Part shown: piece by piece, positions 5,001 through 37,000 of the stretch
Layout: each line of letters begins with the position of its first letter
Numbering within the stretch: position 1 is the first letter of the stretch
Assembly: GCA_010909165.1 (NCBI GenBank)
Contig: MU008162.1
Location: 1,488,001-1,552,000, forward strand
DNA length: 64,000 nt
Direction of reading: 5' to 3'
DNA from: Anthoceros angustus
Taxonomy: Eukaryota; Plantae; Anthocerotophyta
Notes under the pieces: model-generated
Told to the model about the DNA's origin: nothing
The model's database searches: none
Seen by the model: the letters and a program-made list of their open reading frames with translations, nothing else
Program-made: the position numbers and the translations under genes

Positions 5001-7438
5001 AGCTACATTCCAGGAAAAGTCTTTAAAAGCACACAATAGCTTGAAACGTTGAAGGGCAAGATCCCAGTCACAGGTTTACGACCACCAGAAAGCTTGATGG
5101 CCGTCACTGGCGATAGGGCCTGAATCAACAGCTTACCGTTTCATCTTTCTCCCTGAGCTGATGTCAGGTTCCCGAAGCTCAACTGCAGATTGTGTTCGTT
5201 TGTAAAATTCAAATCCAAATTCTCTAGCAGCTACAACAAAAGCTGCTTCATCTGGAGATTCTGCCTCATAGGTTATCACACCAGTATCTTCATCCGTGTC
5301 TGGAATAGCTGTATGGCAGACAGCAAGAATACGGAAGAATAGCTGGATGTTATCCGAGTTAGGCTCCCTGACCCAGTGCCCATCCATGAGTCGAGAATCT
5401 CGAAAGCCAAAACCCTTGACATAAGGCCAAGCATCAGCACCATTGCCACTATCAGGTTCCCCAGCGGCAGCATCATCCATCTCCGAAGCTTCCTGCCCAA
5501 GCCTCTTAGCTGTGGCCCTTTCAACCTCAGTAACTCCACGCCCATACGCAATCCCTCCAACGGAGCATTTCAAAAAGTCCATCTGATTGCAAGTTAGCGT
5601 GCCTGTTTTGTCAGACAGAATGGTGTCCACCTGCCCAAGCTCCTCATTCAAATTTGAAGTGCGAGCTCGTGCAGGTGTATCTGTCTCCTCATGGTACATT
5701 TCAATGTCCTGATTGATGAACATAGCCTGCAACACCTTTACAACCTCTATGGACACATAGAGCGAAATTGGAATGAGGTAACCATAGAGAATCAGCGCCG
5801 TCACAAGATGAAGGAGGGCAGACTCGGCAGCTCGACTTGGCTTGTAATAAATGTCAGTGTTGTCCGGCCTCAAATACCACATCTTCGGCATCTCAAAGTG
5901 TGTCTTCAACCCAAACACCACAGACCCAATCACAGAGATGAGCACTAGCACACCAAACAGCATGTAGATGATGAGATCCATCTTCCGCTCAATGCGAGTC
6001 CTCTTTGAAGGTGGATCCGTGGCATTCATCATCACCTTGGTGTCATGTCCAGTAAAGACAACAACCCCGTAGATGTGGTTCGTATTGCGCAACTTGGAAT
6101 CCCTCAGCAAAATCTGCTCAGGGCCCAGAGCAAAAGTCTGGCCCTTGGTCTCCAGGTTGCCGATGAAGGTGTAGAGGCTCGGGTTGGGGTCCTCACACCT
6201 GATGACACCTTCGAACGAGTTGAACTCGGTTTGCTCATCCAGATCCATGGTCCGTTCCAAGGACCGCTTCAGCTTCAAATTTGTCTCCCCGTCCAAGTTC
6301 ATCGTCTCCACATAACATATTCCATCCGGATAGTTGGATGACAACAAGAGAAGATCTGCCGGAAAGAACTGATCCTTCTCCACCATCACCACATCCCCCA
6401 CCCGCAGCTTCTTCCACTGCGTCTGCAGGAACTCGCCGTTGCCCACATGAACCAGCACTTTCCGATTGTTCACCCCATTATCCTGAGCACCACACACATC
6501 ACCAATCATCCGTCAGCACCAGGCAGACTGAGAGGCACCACTCCTACTGCCACCAGTACCAAGCACACAAACGTGACGAAACAGGCTAAAGACACCAGAC
6601 ACAAACCTGCATGAAACGCTTCCAGTCTTCCAGAGCCTCCTTGAGCATACTAACCCCCACGACAAAGACGAGAGGAGCGATCAAACTGGCGGGCTTGAAC
6701 GGCGACACGGGAGTCAGGGACAAGGCGGCAGCGAGGAGGAAGTAGAGATTCGCCACCCTCCGGAACTGCTCGAACAGTGACTTGGGAAAAAACGTGAAGA
6801 GGTTGTACTTGGTGGTGGAGACGTAGTTGTTCCTGTACTTGTAAGGCTTCTGGCGATGTCTCTCGGAGTGGTTGGCAAACACAACCCGCGAGAAGCCGGG
6901 GCCCCCCACAGACATTGACTCCTGCCTCTCCACACCATCCGCCGGCCGCATGCAGCTGCCATAGGAGTAGAGCTTGCTGAGCCTGATATTCTTGCGAGCC
7001 TTGGCATGCTTAGCCTTCCGCTCCGTGGTCTCGTCGCTCAGATTGTCGATCGCCACCTCCATATCCCTCCTCTTCGTCTCCGACCCGAGCGCCCTCGACA
7101 CCCTGGCCTCGACAGACTTGGCCGCCCTGCCGTCGTCCAGCAGGTGCGCCTCCACCTCCTTCATCTCGCCCGCCCCCGGATCTCCCTCCCCGCCGTCTCC
7201 CTCCACCTTCAATGCCCCCTCCTCCCTCCGACAAAACTCCACCGATCCACCAAAATGAGATCCCCTCGCTAATAATACAGACGCCACGGCAGTGTCGGCA
7301 ACACTAAACCCGGCGCCTGAGCCCGCTACCGTCCACCTCGCCGTCGCAGGCCGCCTCCGCCCCGGCGTCGTCCGAGCTCAAGGCCGGGGTTGCAGGCCGG
7401 CCTGATCGCGTCCAGCAGCAGCGGCGGGCACCCGCCAT
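2093..7438 (-). CDS. ALA: P4-type ATPase / phospholipid flippase (ALA family), multi-exon
   Basis: Exonic ORFs carry [19 protein letters not shown] (phospho-Asp), [41 protein letters not shown] and C-terminal TM helices. Stop at 2093. The start is either ATG 7164 or ATG 7438 (gccATGG; exon 7438-7330 plus a 61-nt GT-AG intron that restores the frame). Confidence 0.95.
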
Positions 7439-29709: not shown

Positions 29710-31512
29710 TTGTGACAGCCTTCTCAACGATGTCAACGAGCCCCCACAAGCTTCAGAATTTGCAGTCTCAGTATGCTAGCCTCATCGACACAGAGCTCTT
29801 CCAGACAACAGTCAAAGGTGTCACTGATAACAATCGCAGCATGCGCTTGCAAATCAGCTCCTGACAGAAGAACAGCAAATTACAGCACAGCAGAACAGAA
29901 CAGAGCAGAGCAGAATGAAGGGCAGAAGCTCGAGGAAGATGGCAAGGACCCTGGAGATGGAATTGTGTGGAAGGTGTGGAAGGTGTGGCTGTTAAATCCT
30001 CTGAGCCTTTCAGGACAGTCATGACCTCTATTGAATGCCAGAGTACCCATACGGCAGTTGACAGTTATGTGTTACCCCATCCCAGCCCCAAAACTCCACA
30101 GCGACGTCTCAGCCTCTACATTCCACATTCCGTTGTACAAAGTATGTGTATGCTCGTCTATCCATATCACAAACACATGTCAATACGTACGCCATATCTA
30201 ACAACTTCCACCAACATCATATGATCACCTAACCGGCATGTACAGCACCACAATTAAGCCATTAGGACCCACTAACACTCCTATACACTACCATTCCCTA
30301 GAATGTGAGGGCTAGATGGATGCATGCACAAAGGAGTTATTATCTTGAAGGGAAGAAGGATAGACTCTAGGATAAAAGGAAAGTGCAACCAATTGCAGTC
30401 CATGTATTCTTGAGCTCGGATAGAATCAACCATGGATTCCTCAAACTCGGATAGAATCAACCCATCAAAGGAAGGCAGAGAAACAAGCTTACATATGTAC
30501 ATCATCTGCCATCTATGTACATAAAGAAGATGATCCCAGCTGACAGAGCGCTTGAGGCCGGGCAACACATGAAGCTTGGGCAGGCCTGTTTACTGCCAGT
30601 TAGTGCCTGCAAGCTGCGAGGAAAGGGGGCGCTGGTGTCAGAGACTGTGCCCTACCAGCGGCATGTGCAGCCCACCTGCGGGTCGCCGTCCGCGGCATGT
30701 TACAGCTACCGGTACGTCACTGGTCCTGGATACGTACACAACGAGATGTATGTACATACATACGACACATCGGGCCCGGAGACTAGCCGGCCCCAGATTT
30801 ATTATCACCGTCGGGATTTATTGTCGTCACCTCGAGGCTCGCAATAACCGACATTTTTAGGTCGAGTTGAGAGGTGAGCAGAACGCGGTGGGAGAAGCCC
30901 GTACCGGGCCGGCTGCATGTACAAGACGCGCTGTCGCAGCAGCAACCGCGATGGAGGCGAGGGCGGACTGCGATGCCAAGGATGCGCGCATGGAGCGCCA
31001 AGAAACCCTACCGGGCCGTGCCGTGGCTATGGCGGGAAAGCTCTGCGCTCGCGCTCGGCTTTGATTGAGACTGGCGGTGCCGGGAGCGGGACGGAGACAG
31101 CCCAGAGCCTCTGAAGGACTGGAAGGGCCAGGACGGTGCAGGACAGGGCGGGTGGAAGTCTGGTCAGGCCATGGCACGGCTGGACGGGACGGGACTGGAG
31201 AGAGATTAGCAGATTTGGTTACAGGCGTCCATTCTGCGTGATTTCTGCTCTGTGATGCTCTGTCAGTCTGTGCCGTCTTTGCGGGGAGATGCGGAATTGG
31301 CAGTTAAGGATTGGTGTAAGGAAGGTGGAGGGATTGTGGATTTCGAGGTGTGGGAGAGCGAGAATGTGAATGTCCGGAATCGTTTTTGCTGGTTGAGTGC
31401 GAATGATGTCAGGTGGACGAGCTCAGACAAGTGTGAAGTACGTGTAGGAGCTGGAGGTAGTTTGAATTGAAGTAGGGGAGGGAGTGAGATCTGGAGTTGG
31501 AGAGTTTGGGAG

Positions 31513-32522
31513 ATGGATTCGGCACAGGCAGTGGTGCCCTCTGCCGGCTCCGGCTCCGGGGTCTCCAATCTCAGCAATGCGCATTTGCAACCGAGTTTGA
31601 TCGCGGAGGAGCATCCGACGCTGGGGCTGGGGCTGCAGCAGCAGGTGCTGGTGCAGGCTGCGCATACGCAGCACACGGCTAAGAGGAAGGCTTCGAGAGC
31701 GGATGATGTTCAGGTATTTTGTTTTGTGACGCGGAAGAGTGTGGCTTGTTTGAGACGTTGGTTGCTTGAATGTGTGTGTCCAAACTGGTTGGAGTTGGGC
31801 GAGGTTTGGTTCTCGGTGTTGACGGTGAGTTGGGGCAGTGGGGGGAGGTGGCTACGAACTTCTTCATCGATGCGTTCGAGGAGCGGTACGTGGAGATCAA
31901 CAGAGGAAATTTTAGGGGGAAGGATTGGGAGAATTTGGCTGCTCTGGTGAGCGCCAGGTTCATAGGGGAGGGGAAGAGCTTCTCCGCTTTCCAGTGTAAG
32001 CACAAGCTGGAGAATTTGAAGAAGAAGTACAGGAGGGAGAAGGCGGCGATGATGGCGGCGGGGACTGTGAGCTCGGGATGGCAGTGGTATAACAGGATGA
32101 ATCACCTGTTCGGGCACGCGCCAGCCAAGGTGTCGGGAATTGCGGGAGCTGTGGACAATGGAGATCATGAGGAGGTGGAGAGGCCCAGGAAGGATGAGCT
32201 GATGATGGACAGGTTGACGGAAGCCATGGAGATGCAGCACCCGGATGAGCCTGACGAAGGGACGAAGGTCCAGTCGCAGGGAGATGAGCCTGAGATGTGT
32301 GAGGGAACCCCTCAGGGGAGCCCCGGGGTGGCCGGGAAGAGGGCTGTCAAGAAGAAGAAGCGAAGGAGCTCCATGTTCAACCCTGCCAAGGACCTGGCTG
32401 CCAGCTTCAGGGAGTACGCGCAGGCGATGGCTGAAGTGGAAAGGGAGAAAATGCAGATTTTGAGGGCCCTCCTGGCCCATCACAACATCATCGTTCACCC
32501 CAGCACCAACTCAGAATCTTGA
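31513..32522 (+). CDS. Myb/SANT-like (trihelix) DNA-binding protein, Harbinger-type partner ORF (2 exons)
   Basis: Exon 31513-31713, intron 31714-31838 (GT..AG, phase 0), exon 31839-32522 WGEVATNFFIDAFEERY..RGKDWENLA..FQCKHKLENLKKKYRREK..WQWYNRMNHLFG; C-terminal coiled coil KDLAASFREYAQAMAEVEREKMQIL. Confidence 0.82.
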
Positions 32523-32571
32523 CAACGAGGGTGGGCAGCCAGCTGGTCCGGCTCGCGTTAACCTAGATCCT

Positions 32572-33846
32572 TCACACAGCAGCAGCTGTTCTCCGAGCCA
32601 TCCAGTCTTCCAAGAGCGCCATCCTGTTGGCGGAGCCCTGCAGCTGCTCCCCGCCATTCTCACCACCCTGGCCGCGGACCACCTCTTCGTGTAGGCTGTT
32701 GGGAAATGGATCAAGCACCTGGTCGGGGTTCACCTCCCCTGCCAGAGTGCAGTAGTTGTGTAGCACACAGCAAGACACAGCCACTCGGGGCGCATACCGG
32801 AGATCTGTGTTGCAGTTGTTCAGGATCTGCCACCTGCTCTTGAGCATTCCAAAAGCAGTTTGTATTCTATTATGCGACTTCCAAAGCTGCTTGTCGAAGG
32901 CATCCTCTGCAGGACTTCGTGCAGAGAAGGGTTTCACAAGCCAGGTTCTCACAGGATATGCAGCATCCCCTACCAGATAAGGTCTAATCTTCCGCCCCCT
33001 TACGCTCACGCTGTGCTCACTGAACAACCCTCTGTCTTCCATCTTAGTCCACAAACTGGTCACCCTCAGATTGCTTGCGTCATGCGTAGCCCCGGGCATC
33101 TTGCAAGCAACATCCCAGAACAAATGCTCCGAATCGCACACTGCTTGCAGGAGAATGGAGGGAAATCCATGCCTCGACCTATACTCCACCGGATTCCGAG
33201 ACCTACAGGGCTTCCTAAACAGCCGCACGTGGGTGCCATCTACCGCACCCGCCATTCCTGGCAGCTCCGTGAGCTGCGAAAACCTAGCCATGATCCGCAC
33301 CAGCCTCTCTCCAGCAGGCACGGATATGTATCGCGAGTAGAGCTTGTCTCGGTCCGTGAGAATAGAGATGACAATTCTGGTATACTTGGAGATGGTGGAC
33401 GCCCCGATTCCATACATCTCAGACATCTCACTAGGAGCCTTCCCCGATCCCAGCCGGTGCAGCACCACAGCCACAGCCTTGTCCTTCTCCACAGGTTGCC
33501 TCACGAACGTGGCCGCATGTTCGATAAATGGAGACAGCAAATCCACCAGCTTAGTGAAGCTCCCGAACCCCATCCTGAAATGCCTCCTCCACAAAGCATC
33601 CCGCTCTTCCTCCCCGGCATTGAAAGCCTGCCTCCTGACGGTCGCCCACCACAGATTCTTGGTGGCCGGCGACCACCAGATTCTCTCCCCCTCCTCTGAC
33701 TGGGCAATCAGAGTGTAGGCGGCCATCAGTCTCATGACCGCATCCCTGCCCGCTGGAGGCTCCAACAAAGCAAGGAGGAGCAGCAAGGGGTGCACTTGGC
33801 CATTGTGTGTCAAGGCCCACAGCACTGCACTTTCGAAGCAGTCCAT
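32572..33846 (-). CDS. PIF/Harbinger transposase-derived nuclease (HARBI1/ALP1-like) with a DDQ triad
   Basis: Intact ORF (first ATG at 33846): WRRHFRM..F..L..LL, HTH region, GAVDGTHV (D1), YLVGDAAYP (D2), RIQTAFGMLKSRW (canonical vErafG.LK.RW; CAA at 32860-32862), CCVLHNYC. Confidence 0.9.
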   Translation of the reverse strand: MDCFESAVLWALTHNGQVHPLLLLLALLEPPAGRDAVMRLMAAYTLIAQSEEGERIWWSPATKNLWWATVRRQAFNAGEEERDALWRRHFRMGFGSFTKLVDLLSPFIEHAATFVRQPVEKDKAVAVVLHRLGSGKAPSEMSEMYGIGASTISKYTRIVISILTDRDKLYSRYISVPAGERLVRIMARFSQLTELPGMAGAVDGTHVRLFRKPCRSRNPVEYRSRHGFPSILLQAVCDSEHLFWDVACKMPGATHDASNLRVTSLWTKMEDRGLFSEHSVSVRGRKIRPYLVGDAAYPVRTWLVKPFSARSPAEDAFDKQLWKSHNRIQTAFGMLKSRWQILNNCNTDLRYAPRVAVSCCVLHNYCTLAGEVNPDQVLDPFPNSLHEEVVRGQGGENGGEQLQGSANRMALLEDWMARRTAAAV

Positions 33847-34079
33847 TCCTGTCTCTTGCAAGTCTCAATACTGGAATCATGGAGGACAGAATGTAGCGCT
33901 CGTTAGCAAAGCATACAAACATCCGCCGACAGAACCACTGCCGTTACCGTCCAAACTAGTCCGCGGGCGAGGACGATTAAGTATTATAATCCTGGCACGA
34001 GAAAAATGCATTGTCTGTGGGCGGTAACGTGTTGACTGGTTGTATGTGCTCTGGCGCAGTGTGCAAAGAGGTGGATGTT

Positions 34080-37000
34080 TCACAGGGATTCTGCGGCTTG
34101 GCAGCTTCTCGCTGTGTGCAGATAGATGAACTTCCTTTCTATGTGGCACATATCCTTTTTTGTTGATGTTGGAGAGGGGAGAGTACATGTTCTAGCCTTA
34201 CTTGACTCTTGGGATGCTGCATGTCTATAGCCGACCAGAAAACTATGCACCAGTCCGTCCATGTTAGTCCACCAGCTCTGACCAGGCCGTTTCCATGCCC
34301 TCATTCCTGTTTTCTTGGCCTGCATCTTGTGTGCCTGCTCCCACATCTGGGCGCTGGCGTATATGTTAGACATCAACACATACGCTGCAGCATCGTTCTT
34401 GTCTAGCTGCACTGCTTCGTGGAAAGCACGGCATCCCACCTCGACGTTGCTCCACTTTCGACAGGCACCCAAGAGTGTGTGCCAGACTGCAGCATCAGGG
34501 AGGACAGGCATTGTGCTTATGATATCTAATGCCTCATTTAGTCGACCTGCACGGCCGAGGAGATCCACCATGCATGTGTAATGCTCCACTGTGGGAGTGA
34601 TTCCGTAGCATGTGCGCATAGCCTCGAAGTACTCTCTCCCCTTGTTCACTAGGCCCGCGTGACTGCACACTGTTAGCACACTAAGGAATGTGATCCCGAC
34701 TGGCTTTATGCCATCCCCTGTCATTCTTTGAAACAGGTCAAAGACCACTTCGCTGTCTCCTTGACTGCTGTAGCCTGCAATCAGCGCACTCCAGGCAAAA
34801 ACGTCTCTTTCATGCAACGCATCAAACACCTGCTGTGCATCAACCATGCTCCCTGACTTTCCATACATGTTTATCAAGCTGCCGGCTAGAGACGCATGAG
34901 CTTGAAGCCCCAGTTCTTGAATCTGAGCATGTAACTGCCTTCCCAGATGCAAAGCTGCCACATTTGCACATGCCTGCAGGAGGAACGCAAAAGTCACCGT
35001 ATCGGGTACAGCCATGCCTTCTCCTTGCATAGCCCTGTAGAGACCAAGGACTTCCTGGCCCATGCCTTGCTGAGAATACCCTGCTATCACAGCGGTCCAC
35101 GTCACAACATCTTTTGGTCCAAGTCCGTCAAACACTCTCTGAGCGTCTTCCAAGTTACCACACTTGGCATACATGTTCACCAAACAGCTGGCTACAAATG
35201 CATCACCTTCATGTCCTTGCTCTTGGATTTGCGCATGAAGCTGCATGCCCATCTCCAGAGCTTGGGTTCCAACACTTGCACATGCTTGCAGGAGACACAC
35301 AAATGTCACAGAATCCGGTTTAGCGATTCCTTCTTCTTGCATAGCACTGTAAAGACGAAGGGCTTCCTGGCCCATTCCCTGCTGAGAATACCCTGCTATC
35401 ATGGCATTCCATGTCCCCACATCTCTTTTTGGACCAAGTCTATCAAACACCGTTTGAGCGTCTTCCAGGCTTCCACACTTTGCATACATGTTCACCAAAC
35501 TGTTGGCTACAAACACATCAGCTTCATGTCCTTGTTTTCTAATTTGTGCGTGAAGCTGCTTCCCCTTCTCCAAAGCTGGAGTGCCGACATTCCCCAATGC
35601 CTGCAGGAGGCACACAAATGTCCAAGAATCGGGTACTGTGATGCCTTCTTCTTGCATAGAACTGTAGAGGCGAAGAGCCTCGTGCACCCTGCCCTGCTGG
35701 GCATACCCTGCTAGAATGGTAGTCCATGTCACCTCATTCTTCTCACCAAGTCCATCAAACACACTCTCAGCATCTTCCAAGCTGCCACACTTAGCATACA
35801 TGTTTACCAAACTGCTGGCTACATACACATCAGCTTGATGTCCTCCTACTTTAATCTGTGCATGCAACTGCTTCCCTTTCTCCAATGCCTGGGTGCCCAC
35901 ACTGGCGCATGCCTGCAGGAGGCACACAAATGTGACGGAATTGGGTACTGCGATGCCTTCCTCTTCCATGGCACTGTAGATACAAAGTGCTTCCTGGCCC
36001 ATGCCCTGCTGGGAGTACCCTGATATCATGGCATTCCATGTCACAACATCTCTGTGCCCAAGGCCGTCAAAAACTCTCTGCGCGTCTTGCAAGCTTCCAC
36101 ATCTGGCATACATGTTTACCAGACTGTTCGCTATAAGCACGTTATCCTCTTGTCCTCGTTCTCTAATTTGCCTATGAAGCTGCTTTCCCTTCTCCAAAGC
36201 TGGGGACCCCACACTTGCACATGCTTGGAAGAGGCACACAAATGTGATGCAGTCAGGCGCCACGCCACCATGTTGCTGCATATCACTGTAGAGACTGAGG
36301 GCTTCGTGGCCCATGCCCTGCTGGGAATAACCTGATATCATGGCATTCCACGTCACCGCATCTTTCTGGCTGAGACCATCAAACACTTCTCGAGCAGCTT
36401 CCAGGCTACCACACTTGGCATACATGTCCACCAGGCAATTACAGACAAACAAATCAGGCTCAAGCCCACTGGCCAACACATCAGCATGCAGCAGCTGCCC
36501 AGTTTTCAGGTCCGTTCCCCTTGCACAAGCCTGAAGGGCTGCCACAAAGACATGGCCATCTGGCTTCACACTCGACCTGCGCATCCGATGATAGAGTTGT
36601 ATAGCCTGCTTGTCTTCTCCGTGCTTAACATGCGCAGAGATTATGGCAGACCACGTGAAGGCATCTGGTTTTGCAACCACTGCCAAGACATCCATAGCAT
36701 CCTGCAACCTGCCATGAGAGGCATACATTCGCAAGATATGGTTACACAGGAACGTATCCGACTGGTACCCCAGTTTCACCGTGAAAGCATGGATACGGCG
36801 ACCCAGAACAAGATCCTTCTCCACCACACATCTCTTCAGCACAGTGTAAAAGAGGGTTTTAGAAATACAACACTCCTTCTGAACCAGAACTCCCAAAGCC
36901 TCCACAGCCTCAACTAGATGGCCCTGATAACACACGTTGCTCACAGTTTCAGACGACACAAGATGAAACAGATCAATACTGAGAGCGATATCCATATCCC

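What the first reader, a model, noticed from the sequence alone, without database searches (positions are those of the whole stretch)
31513..33846. Candidate domesticated Harbinger two-gene module: intact Myb/trihelix gene and a nuclease with catalytic Glu replaced by Gln, tail-to-tail, no TIRs
Seen: both ORFs are uninterrupted and convergent, with only 49 bp between stop codons, and they sit in the gene-dense half between host genes. The nuclease keeps D1 (GAVDGTH) and D2 (VGDAAYP), but the third residue is Q (RIQTAFG; CAA at 32860-32862, one base from GAA). I found no TIR/TAA-TSD pair, and the nuclease start is only about 230 bp from the PPR stop. Known: PIF/Harbinger elements need a DDE nuclease plus a Myb/SANT partner. 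Domesticated pairs with altered or lost catalytic activity (ALP1/ALP2, HDP1/HDP2, PANDA) act as chromatin regulators with PRC2 or IDM complexes. Inference: this may be a separate, physically linked domesticated pair in a seed-free plant, with overlapping antisense 3' UTRs.
Basis: partly seen in the sequence, partly recalled or inferred. Interest (0 to 1): 0.78.

Follow-up and report, generated by a model that had tools for sequence, protein, structure and literature searches.

The report
Immobile, nuclease-dead Harbinger gene pair
Two intact neighbouring genes in this probable hornwort are the enzyme and DNA-binding partner of a Harbinger transposon from the plant branch that gave rise to ALP1; they lack transposon ends and a catalytic residue, so they may be host-retained, but this is unproven.

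Summary
A Myb/trihelix ORF (31770-32522, +) and a DDE_Tnp_4 nuclease ORF (32572-33846, -) converge with 49 bp between their stops. The nuclease keeps D1 and D2 but has Gln (CAA, 32860-32862) where relatives have the catalytic Glu. I found no TIR/TSD above chance and no second copy in the window.

- The nuclease is not from a separate lineage. It falls in the land-plant clade that holds angiosperm ALP1, gymnosperm, Selaginella and Riccia genes.
- Its position inside that clade is unresolved (AU p 0.46).
- Its nearest relative by tree path is a TIR-bounded, evidently mobile element with the same convergent nuclease-Myb layout (L004).
- That layout is the family norm, seen in about 20 metagenome loci.
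- Triad changes occur in 22% of the 150 best homologues.
- Apart from Glu to Gln, the nuclease is about as conserved as DDE-intact relatives.

My estimates: a host-retained, nuclease-dead pair 0.45; a dead transposon copy 0.35. Copy number, synteny, selection and expression could not be tested.

The scan has unchecked notes of similar ALP1-like nuclease/Myb pairs elsewhere in this genome (s1-680416, s1-278095, s1-324706).

The parts
31513..31713 (+). Putative exon 1 of the Myb gene (67 codons, ends in a basic AKRKASR stretch)
   Evidence: Frame and splice scan. There is no Pfam hit on this frame. The TIR-bounded relative's Myb has a comparable basic stretch just before its first Trp. This is a model, not a demonstrated exon.
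31714..31838 (+). Putative 125-nt GT..AG intron. The alternative start ATG at 31770 lies inside it.
   Evidence: Donor CAG|GTATTT at 31714 and acceptor CAG|TGG at 31838 keep the frame. The tblastn alignment of the L004 Myb to the window begins exactly at 31839.
31839..32522 (+). Myb/trihelix coding exon with stop. The uninterrupted ORF reaches back to the ATG at 31770.
   Evidence: ORF list and Pfam Myb_DNA-bind_4 at E 8.6e-13. It is homologous to the Myb partners of L004 and Adiantum.
31836..32108 (+). Myb_DNA-bind_4 domain, with Trp, Trp and Leu at the three hallmark positions, followed by a conserved GIAGAVD motif
   Evidence: Pfam residues 23-113 of the ORF. Seed sequences show that the mobile L004 and Adiantum partners also have I/L at the third position and the same post-domain motif.
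32523..32571 (.). 49-bp spacer between the two stop codons
   Evidence: There is no AATAAA in it, so the 3' ends must overlap the partner gene (inference).
32572..33846 (-). Intronless Harbinger-type nuclease ORF (424 aa plus stop)
   Evidence: ORF list. Pfam DDE_Tnp_4 at 7.9e-18 and Plant_tran at 7.1e-12. It is colinear over residues 1-420 with Riccia fluitans KAL2622327.1.
33337..33579 (-). N-terminal helix-turn-helix-like block conserved in the family (about residues 90-170)
   Evidence: Conserved columns F97, R116, A126, L132, G146 and T151 are all retained. Relatives carry a weak PF26138 hit.
32755..33243 (-). DDE_Tnp_4 catalytic domain
   Evidence: Pfam residues 207-369 of the 429-aa translation.
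33238..33240 (-). First catalytic Asp (GAT, in GAVDGTH)
32965..32967 (-). Second catalytic Asp (GAT, in VGDAAYP)
32860..32862 (-). Gln codon CAA in the column of the catalytic Glu
33847..34079 (.). 233-bp gap between the nuclease ATG and the stop of the upstream same-strand PPR gene. It holds no transposon end.

Best explanation
The locus is a complete two-gene PIF/Harbinger coding unit: a nuclease and its Myb/trihelix partner in the family's usual convergent layout. It comes from the land-plant Harbinger lineage that also produced ALP1. It has no recognisable terminal inverted repeats or target duplication. Its nuclease has Asp-Asp-Gln instead of Asp-Asp-Glu, so it should not be able to cut and paste itself. 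That loss of activity is inferred from the DDE mutants of rice Ping cited in PMC4671723. Everything else is intact: both reading frames, the N-terminal helix-turn-helix block, 40 of 46 family-conserved nuclease positions, the Myb hallmark residues, the post-Myb motif and the C-terminal helix. The reading I commit to is that the host retains the pair as a nuclease-dead DNA-binding/adaptor complex. The Myb protein would bind DNA and hold the inactive nuclease through its C-terminus, as Harbinger proteins and ALP1-ALP2 or HDP1-HDP2 do. The two convergent transcripts would overlap at their 3' ends. Shown here: the anatomy, the family, the clade, the absence of ends, and the Gln. Inferred: loss of activity, protein-protein and DNA binding, host retention, and any chromatin role.
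For: Both ORFs are intact and no ends are found. An old neutral relic that had lost both ends by decay should also have lost its frames; several relatives do carry in-frame stops (L010 has 5, L018 and L027 one each). Gln sits at the Glu column. Within the same clade, solitary intronless genes lie among host genes and have lost catalytic residues independently: Selaginella G-D-A between SPT16 and a P450, the P0021 group D-R-E, and Curcuma 'ALP1' A-D-E. Two Riccia species keep closely similar, solitary copies. The lineage is therefore prone to host retention. GC3 of both ORFs (0.67 and 0.77) lies in the range of the neighbouring host genes. No copy exists elsewhere in the 64 kb. No protein above 44% identity was found among 1.84 billion representatives.
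Against: The nearest relative by tree path (L004) is TIR-bounded, DDE-intact and evidently mobile, with the same layout. The window nuclease differs from family consensus at only three positions that are not clade-wide (S263T, R325H, E329Q). That fits a recent inactivation as well as it fits constraint. A triad change is common in the family, at 22%. Other unchecked notes report several ALP1-like nuclease/Myb loci and many Harbinger copies in this genome. Short or degenerate ends could escape my scan. Copy number, orthologues, dN/dS and expression are all untested.
Confidence: 0.45

Rival explanations
1. This is a dead transposon copy with no host function. A fairly young Harbinger copy lost its ends by deletion or rearrangement (for example when the neighbouring intronless PPR gene arrived) and took a single Glu-to-Gln hit. 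Its frames are still open only because little time has passed.
For: Closest relative by tree path is a mobile TIR-bounded element. The nuclease is about as conserved as DDE-intact relatives apart from one codon that is one base from GAA. The convergent layout is the family norm. Triad changes are frequent. The genome is reported to hold many Harbinger copies (unchecked).
Against: It needs three coincidences: loss of both ends, two open frames totalling about 2 kb, and a hit on one of three catalytic codons out of 424. No partial end or TSD is visible. There is no second copy in the window.
Confidence: 0.35
2. The pair is the hornwort representative of the ALP1 lineage itself, still joined to the Myb partner from which ALP2 descends. 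Linkage would then be ancestral and was lost in liverworts, lycophytes and seed plants.
For: A tree that holds the window with the solitary ALP1-containing clade is only 0.89 log-likelihood units worse (AU p 0.46). The N-terminus is colinear with the Riccia protein from residue 1. R325H is shared with Riccia. PMC4671723 reports ALP1 homologues in all land-plant groups, including a hornwort.
Against: The free tree puts the window with the mobile L004 element (support 70) outside the solitary clade (support 89-94). With more rows this becomes a four-way polytomy. The Myb keeps its Trp residues, whereas ALP2 has lost them (PMC7282668). No named ALP2 sequence was available for comparison.
Confidence: 0.12
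3. The element is still mobilisable. It would have short or atypical ends that I missed and be moved in trans by a DDE-intact relative. Alternatively the CAA is an assembly error and the nuclease is active.
For: All non-catalytic motifs are intact. L004's TIR is itself imperfect, at 83% over 29 nt. Another ALP1-clade pair with an intact triad is noted in this genome (unchecked).
Against: Nothing above chance brackets the unit. The L004 terminal motif is absent from the window. Only 233 bp separate the nuclease ATG from a host gene's stop.
Confidence: 0.08

Closest known systems
ALP1 / ALP2 (Arabidopsis PRC2-associated domesticated Harbinger nuclease and Myb; PMC4671723, PMC7282668)
   Same: The nuclease lies in the same land-plant clade as a monocot protein that NCBI names ALP1, and as gymnosperm, Selaginella and Riccia genes. 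It has lost a catalytic-triad residue and has no TIRs. A Myb-derived partner is expected to bind it through its C-terminus.
   Different: Here only Glu is changed (D-D-Q); Arabidopsis ALP1 is D-G-A. The rest of the nuclease is far more conserved: 87% of family-conserved positions against 59% in an angiosperm ALP1-clade protein. The partner is physically linked and keeps its Trp residues, whereas ALP2 has lost them. Orthology is unresolved. No PRC2 link was tested.
Active PIF/Harbinger transposons (rice Ping/Pong type; here the TIR-bounded element in L004)
   Same: Two genes, a DDE_Tnp_4 nuclease and a Myb_DNA-bind_4 partner, in convergent orientation. L004 is the nearest relative by tree path, at 41% identity for the nuclease and 29% for the Myb domain.
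   Different: The window unit has no TIRs, no subterminal repeats, no TSD, and Gln at the catalytic Glu.
Linked co-domesticated PIF pairs of insects (DPLG7-DPM7, APLG-APM, LPLG2-LPM2; PMC9710019)
   Same: An adjacent nuclease-derived gene and Myb/MADF-derived gene, intact coding regions, and no TIR/TSD.
   Different: In the insect pairs, single copy, conserved synteny and low dN/dS (about 0.04-0.18) were shown. None of that could be shown here. The lineages are unrelated.
HDP1 / HDP2 (Arabidopsis IDM histone acetyltransferase complex; PMC5339849)
   Same: A Harbinger-derived nuclease with an incomplete triad, paired with a Myb partner that still binds DNA. In terms of which activities survive, this is the closest functional analogy.
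   Different: HDP1/HDP2 are reported as orthologous clades restricted to the angiosperm species sampled, from a separate domestication. Adjacency of HDP1 and HDP2 is not mentioned in the paper's text (zero occurrences of 'adjacent'). No HDP1 sequence was available to place on my tree.

Membership tests
PIF/Harbinger superfamily (as a transposon) | DDE_Tnp_4-type nuclease gene | tested here: met
   Pfam PF13359 at E 7.9e-18 and PF04827 at 7.1e-12.
PIF/Harbinger superfamily (as a transposon) | Intact D-D-E catalytic triad | tested here: not met
   The triad is D-D-Q, with CAA at 32860-32862.
PIF/Harbinger superfamily (as a transposon) | Second gene encoding a Myb/SANT/trihelix protein | tested here: met
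   PF13837 at E 8.6e-13. It is homologous to the Myb partners of L004 and Adiantum.
PIF/Harbinger superfamily (as a transposon) | Terminal inverted repeats | tested here: not met
   Nothing above chance was found. The L004 terminal motif is absent.
PIF/Harbinger superfamily (as a transposon) | 3-bp (TWA) target-site duplication | tested here: not met
   No TAA/TTA-flanked candidate was found.
Domesticated transposase gene | Intact coding region without transposon ends | tested here: met
Domesticated transposase gene | Single or low copy and immobile; orthologues at syntenic positions | not testable with these tools
   Only this window is readable. Its proteins are not in the protein collection. 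The single-protein metagenome scan was blank. The look-up of encoding contigs closed.
Domesticated transposase gene | Purifying selection (dN/dS well below 1) after immobilisation | not testable with these tools
   The nearest relative is 44% identical, so synonymous sites are saturated.
Domesticated transposase gene | Expression as a host gene | not testable with these tools
   No transcript data are available.
ALP1 orthologous group | Placement inside the clade of solitary land-plant ALP1 homologues | tested here: inconclusive
   The window is inside the wider clade (support 87-92). Its place relative to the solitary subclade is unresolved: the free tree puts it outside with L004, and the constrained tree gives AU p 0.46.
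ALP1 orthologous group | No adjacent Myb gene (stated for ALP1 in PMC4671723) | tested here: not met
   A Myb gene lies 49 bp from the nuclease stop. The Riccia, Selaginella, L003 and L008 loci have none within 6-8 kb.
ALP1 orthologous group | Association with PRC2 | not testable with these tools
   This needs biochemistry.
ALP2-type Myb derivative | Loss of the three DNA-binding Trp residues (PMC7282668) | tested here: not met
   The window Myb has Trp, Trp and Leu, the same pattern as the mobile L004 partner, which has Trp, Trp and Ile.

The most novel reading that the evidence does not exclude
The pair is the hornwort member of the ALP1-ALP2 lineage, caught with the nuclease-derived and Myb-derived genes still side by side in the original transposon layout. 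It would be a living intermediate showing that ALP1 and ALP2 came from one Harbinger insertion, and that catalytic loss happened independently in several land-plant lines.
Probability: 0.12. Interest if true: 0.8.

Novelty: new member of a known kind. Interest (0 to 1): 0.42.

Why it matters
Harbinger transposons have repeatedly given hosts pairs of chromatin regulators: ALP1/ALP2, HDP1/HDP2, HARBI1/NAIF1 and the insect pairs. In none of the plant papers read here are the two genes described as adjacent, so co-domestication from one insertion is inferred rather than seen.

A linked, end-less, nuclease-dead pair in an early-diverging land plant, inside the ALP1-related clade, would be a direct view of that step. 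It would also be a tractable system for asking what the proteins do before they diverge.

The survey made here also bears on a statement in PMC4671723, that the DDE triad is conserved in all land-plant groups below the angiosperms. Selaginella (G-D-A), a 59-member group of unidentified origin (D-R-E) and this locus (D-D-Q) are exceptions. If the locus is only a dead copy, it is ordinary.

Tried and rejected
- **Ends.** A general inverted-repeat search, a targeted TIR+TSD scan with shuffled controls, a direct-repeat search and a search for the L004 terminal motif found nothing above chance. The only inverted repeat that brackets the unit is 31520-31544 / 33925-33949, with 18 of 25 matches. It is at chance level, has flanks ATT and TCC, and its left arm lies inside the putative first exon.
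- **Protein word searches.** The word-index search found only relatives of about 31% identity for the nuclease and none for the Myb.
- **Exact look-up.** Six window proteins are not in the collection, so organism and annotation could not be read from it.
- **Metagenome scan.** The scan with the single protein found nothing. The profile scan gave 80 loci, none close.
- **Solved structures.** None are detectable by sequence or profile.
- **Protein atlas.** For the Myb it returned only generic Myb_DNA-bind_4 clusters, mostly animal.
- **The name 'ALP1-like'.** It is not evidence, because NCBI also gives it to fish proteins.
- **Truncated PPR gene.** I considered whether the insertion had cut the PPR gene, but no DYW-like remainder lies left of the unit.
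- **GC3 comparison.** It does not discriminate between the readings.
- **AU tests.** They could not place the window.
- The look-up of encoding contigs closed, so the loci of P0025, P0034 and Riccia sorocarpa could not be read.
- **Spliced Myb protein.** The joined two-exon protein was not searched. The exons were searched separately by reference.
Full report
**1. What is there**

The + strand carries an uninterrupted 250-codon ORF (31770-32522). The - strand carries a 429-codon ORF (32572-33861) whose first ATG is at 33846, giving 424 aa. The stop codons are 49 bp apart.

Pfam assigns the first ORF to Myb_DNA-bind_4 (E 8.6e-13, residues 23-113). It assigns the second to DDE_Tnp_4 (E 7.9e-18) and Plant_tran.

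In three independent alignments this Gln falls in the column of the catalytic Glu, while both Asp residues are kept. Among the 150 best representative homologues that column is Glu in 119 and Gln in one other.

The neighbours are ordinary host genes:
- IPP transferase
- a histidine phosphatase
- pantothenate kinase
- a PNP_UDP_1 phosphorylase
- on the same strand as the nuclease, an intronless 1074-codon ORF encoding an E-type PPR protein, which ends 233 bp upstream of the nuclease ATG

A gene starting there needs an intron. The best model uses a donor CAG|GTATTT at 31714 and an acceptor at 31838, a 125-nt intron. Two observations support it:
- The Myb partner of the closest relative aligns to the window from exactly 31839.
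- That protein, like the putative exon 1, has a basic stretch just before the first Trp.

I searched the exons separately by reference. The joined protein was not searched.

**2. No transposon ends, no second copy**

A general inverted-repeat search found nothing convincing around the unit. A targeted scan looked for a 14-nt terminal inverted repeat with at least 11 matches plus an identical 3-nt flank. The left end was allowed in 30200-31840 and the right end in 33847-34300. It gave two hits at 11/14, neither with a TAA/TTA flank. Shuffled flanks gave a mean of 0.6 hits, with matches of up to 13/14. The terminal motif of the closest mobile relative is absent. Neither protein has another copy in the 64 kb.

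**3. Relatives**

The word-index search saw only relatives of about 31% identity for the nuclease and none for the Myb. I therefore ran the full HMMER scan of 1.84 billion representatives. It shows a clear step. About ten proteins score 230-345 bits at 37-44% identity, against about 150 bits for generic Harbinger nucleases.

The named proteins in that top group are:
- Riccia fluitans and R. sorocarpa hypothetical proteins, colinear with the window protein from residue 1
- Selaginella XP_024520164.1
- Adiantum proteins
- Picea D5AAT3, Ginkgo and Cryptomeria proteins
- Cuscuta proteins
- more distantly, a Curcuma protein that NCBI names ALP1

The window's own proteins are not in the collection. 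The best identity anywhere is 44%.

**4. Genomic context of the relatives**

| Locus | Context |
|---|---|
| Riccia (L001) | Solitary, intronless; no Myb within 8 kb |
| Selaginella (L002) | Solitary, intronless, between SPT16 and a P450; no Myb within 8 kb |
| L003, L008, L009 and the closest metagenome loci | Solitary |
| L004 (closest relative by tree path) | Same convergent nuclease-Myb layout |
| Adiantum (L006, L007) | Myb directly upstream on the same strand; two dispersed copies 98.5% identical over a 2.7-kb core, with related but more diverged sequence over about 4 kb in all |

L004 is evidently mobile. Its unit is bracketed by a 29-nt inverted repeat (2052-2080 / 5258-5286, 83%) with nested subterminal repeats. 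An independent assembly from another run (L005) begins and ends 7 nt inside the two arms. That is what a repeat boundary looks like.

An HMM of the Myb domain found a Myb ORF on the opposite strand downstream of the nuclease in about 20 of 80 metagenome loci. The tail-to-tail layout is therefore the norm for this lineage, not a peculiarity of the window.

**5. Trees**

Three quick trees were finished, one of 69 rows under LG+C20 and two of 43 rows under LG+G4. A careful search on 36 rows did not finish, and its quick tree was used instead. All four agree on the following:
- A plant clade (support 97-99) is separated from an outgroup that includes named coral and fish proteins and many unnamed ones.
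- Inside it is a clade (support 87-92) that holds the window, L004, a seed-plant subclade (support 100) containing the Curcuma ALP1 protein, and the Riccia, Selaginella, L003 and P0021 genes.
- Adiantum and P0025 fall inside this clade in the first two trees and just outside it in the last two.

The free tree pairs the window with L004 (support 70), outside the solitary subclade (support 89-94). Forcing the window into that subclade costs only 0.89 log-likelihood units (AU p 0.46). With more partial rows the node becomes a four-way polytomy.

The nuclease therefore belongs to the ALP1-related lineage that PMC4671723 traced through all land plants. Whether it is the orthologue of ALP1 or a sister transposon line is open.

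**6. State of the proteins**

| Sequence | Catalytic triad |
|---|---|
| Window | D-D-Q |
| Selaginella | G-D-A |
| P0021 group | D-R-E |
| L009 | first Asp replaced by Gly; other two positions not covered |
| Curcuma ALP1 | A-D-E |
| P0062 | A-D-D |
| All other clade members, including L004 and Adiantum | D-D-E |

Across the 150 best homologues, 22% have at least one triad change.

I also scored 46 positions that are at least 80% conserved in 94 DDE-intact relatives:

| Sequence | Positions kept |
|---|---|
| Window | 40 of 46 (87%) |
| L004 | 91% |
| Selaginella | 80% |
| P0021 | 72% |
| P0062 (angiosperm ALP1-clade protein) | 59% |

Three of the window's six differences are shared by most or all clade members tested (P212K and N318D by all, F145Y by most). 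Only S263T, R325H (shared with Riccia) and E329Q are not.

The Myb protein keeps Trp, Trp and Leu at the hallmark positions. The mobile L004 and Adiantum partners also have Ile or Leu at the third position. It also keeps the conserved post-domain motif and a C-terminal helix. GC3 of both genes lies in the host range.

**7. Reading**

Shown here:
- a complete Harbinger coding unit of the ALP1-related plant lineage
- no recognisable ends
- Gln at the catalytic Glu
- otherwise as well conserved as DDE-intact family members

Inferred:
- It cannot move itself. Single triad mutations drastically reduce Ping transposition, as cited in PMC4671723.
- The two proteins probably still bind each other and DNA.

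I weigh a host-retained, nuclease-dead pair at 0.45. Loss of both ends, two open frames and a catalytic hit together are more easily explained by selection on the proteins than by chance, and solitary relatives in the same clade show repeated retention with catalytic loss.

I weigh a dead copy at 0.35, for these reasons:
- The nearest relative by tree path is mobile.
- The change is one base.
- The rest of the enzyme looks untouched.
- Other notes of this scan, which I could not check, report several ALP1-like nuclease/Myb loci and many Harbinger copies in this genome.

The ancestral-linkage reading, in which this is ALP1/ALP2 itself, gets 0.12. A still-mobilisable element gets 0.08.

**8. Comparison with what is known**

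Linked, end-less, co-domesticated PIF pairs are described in insects, with synteny and dN/dS evidence (PMC9710019). In plants, ALP1/ALP2 and HDP1/HDP2 are known. I found no paper on hornwort Harbinger domestication.

This locus is therefore at most a new member of a known kind. Its value would lie in its phylogenetic position and the retained linkage.

**9. Limits**

- Copy number, synteny, selection, expression and read support could not be tested.
- The look-up of encoding contigs closed.
- No named Arabidopsis ALP1, ALP2 or HDP1 sequence was available from the tools.
- The organism is called a probable hornwort only on earlier notes of this scan.

Noticed in passing
L004:2052-5286 (Logan ERR10900182 contig; same element in L005 from SRR23617307): A complete TIR-bounded Harbinger element. 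It has a 29-nt imperfect TIR and nested subterminal CCGTCGG-like repeats, a DDE-intact nuclease (P0018) and a convergent 365-aa Myb partner (P0202). The organism is unknown. The second assembly's contig ends 7 nt inside both arms.
   Followed up: partly
L002:8001-9335 (Selaginella moellendorffii GL377675.1): XP_024520164.1 is a solitary intronless ALP1-clade gene between SPT16 and a P450, with triad G-D-A. A 59-member group (P0021, L008) has D-R-E. These are exceptions to the statement in PMC4671723 that the DDE triad is conserved in all land plants below the angiosperms.
   Followed up: partly
L006:5830-10060 and L007 (Adiantum nelumboides): Two dispersed copies of a Myb-then-nuclease tandem unit on the same strand, 98.5% identical over a 2.7-kb core, with no clear TIRs found. 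L007 has an insertion of about 1.6 kb upstream of the Myb.
   Followed up: partly
window:34080-37304 (-): A 1074-codon ORF encoding an intronless PLS-type PPR protein with an E motif. It ends shortly after the E2-like stretch without a DYW domain, and lies in tandem on the same strand 233 bp upstream of the nuclease ATG.
   Followed up: no
window:31710-32498 (-) and 32860-33699 (+): Long antisense ORFs (262 and 279 codons) lie over the Myb and nuclease genes. They have no family match and are probably a by-product of GC-rich third positions.
   Followed up: no
L010, L018, L027 (moss-associated metagenome contigs): Solitary relatives of the same clade carry in-frame stops in the nuclease match (5, 1 and 1). 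Not every solitary member of the clade is therefore an intact gene.
   Followed up: no
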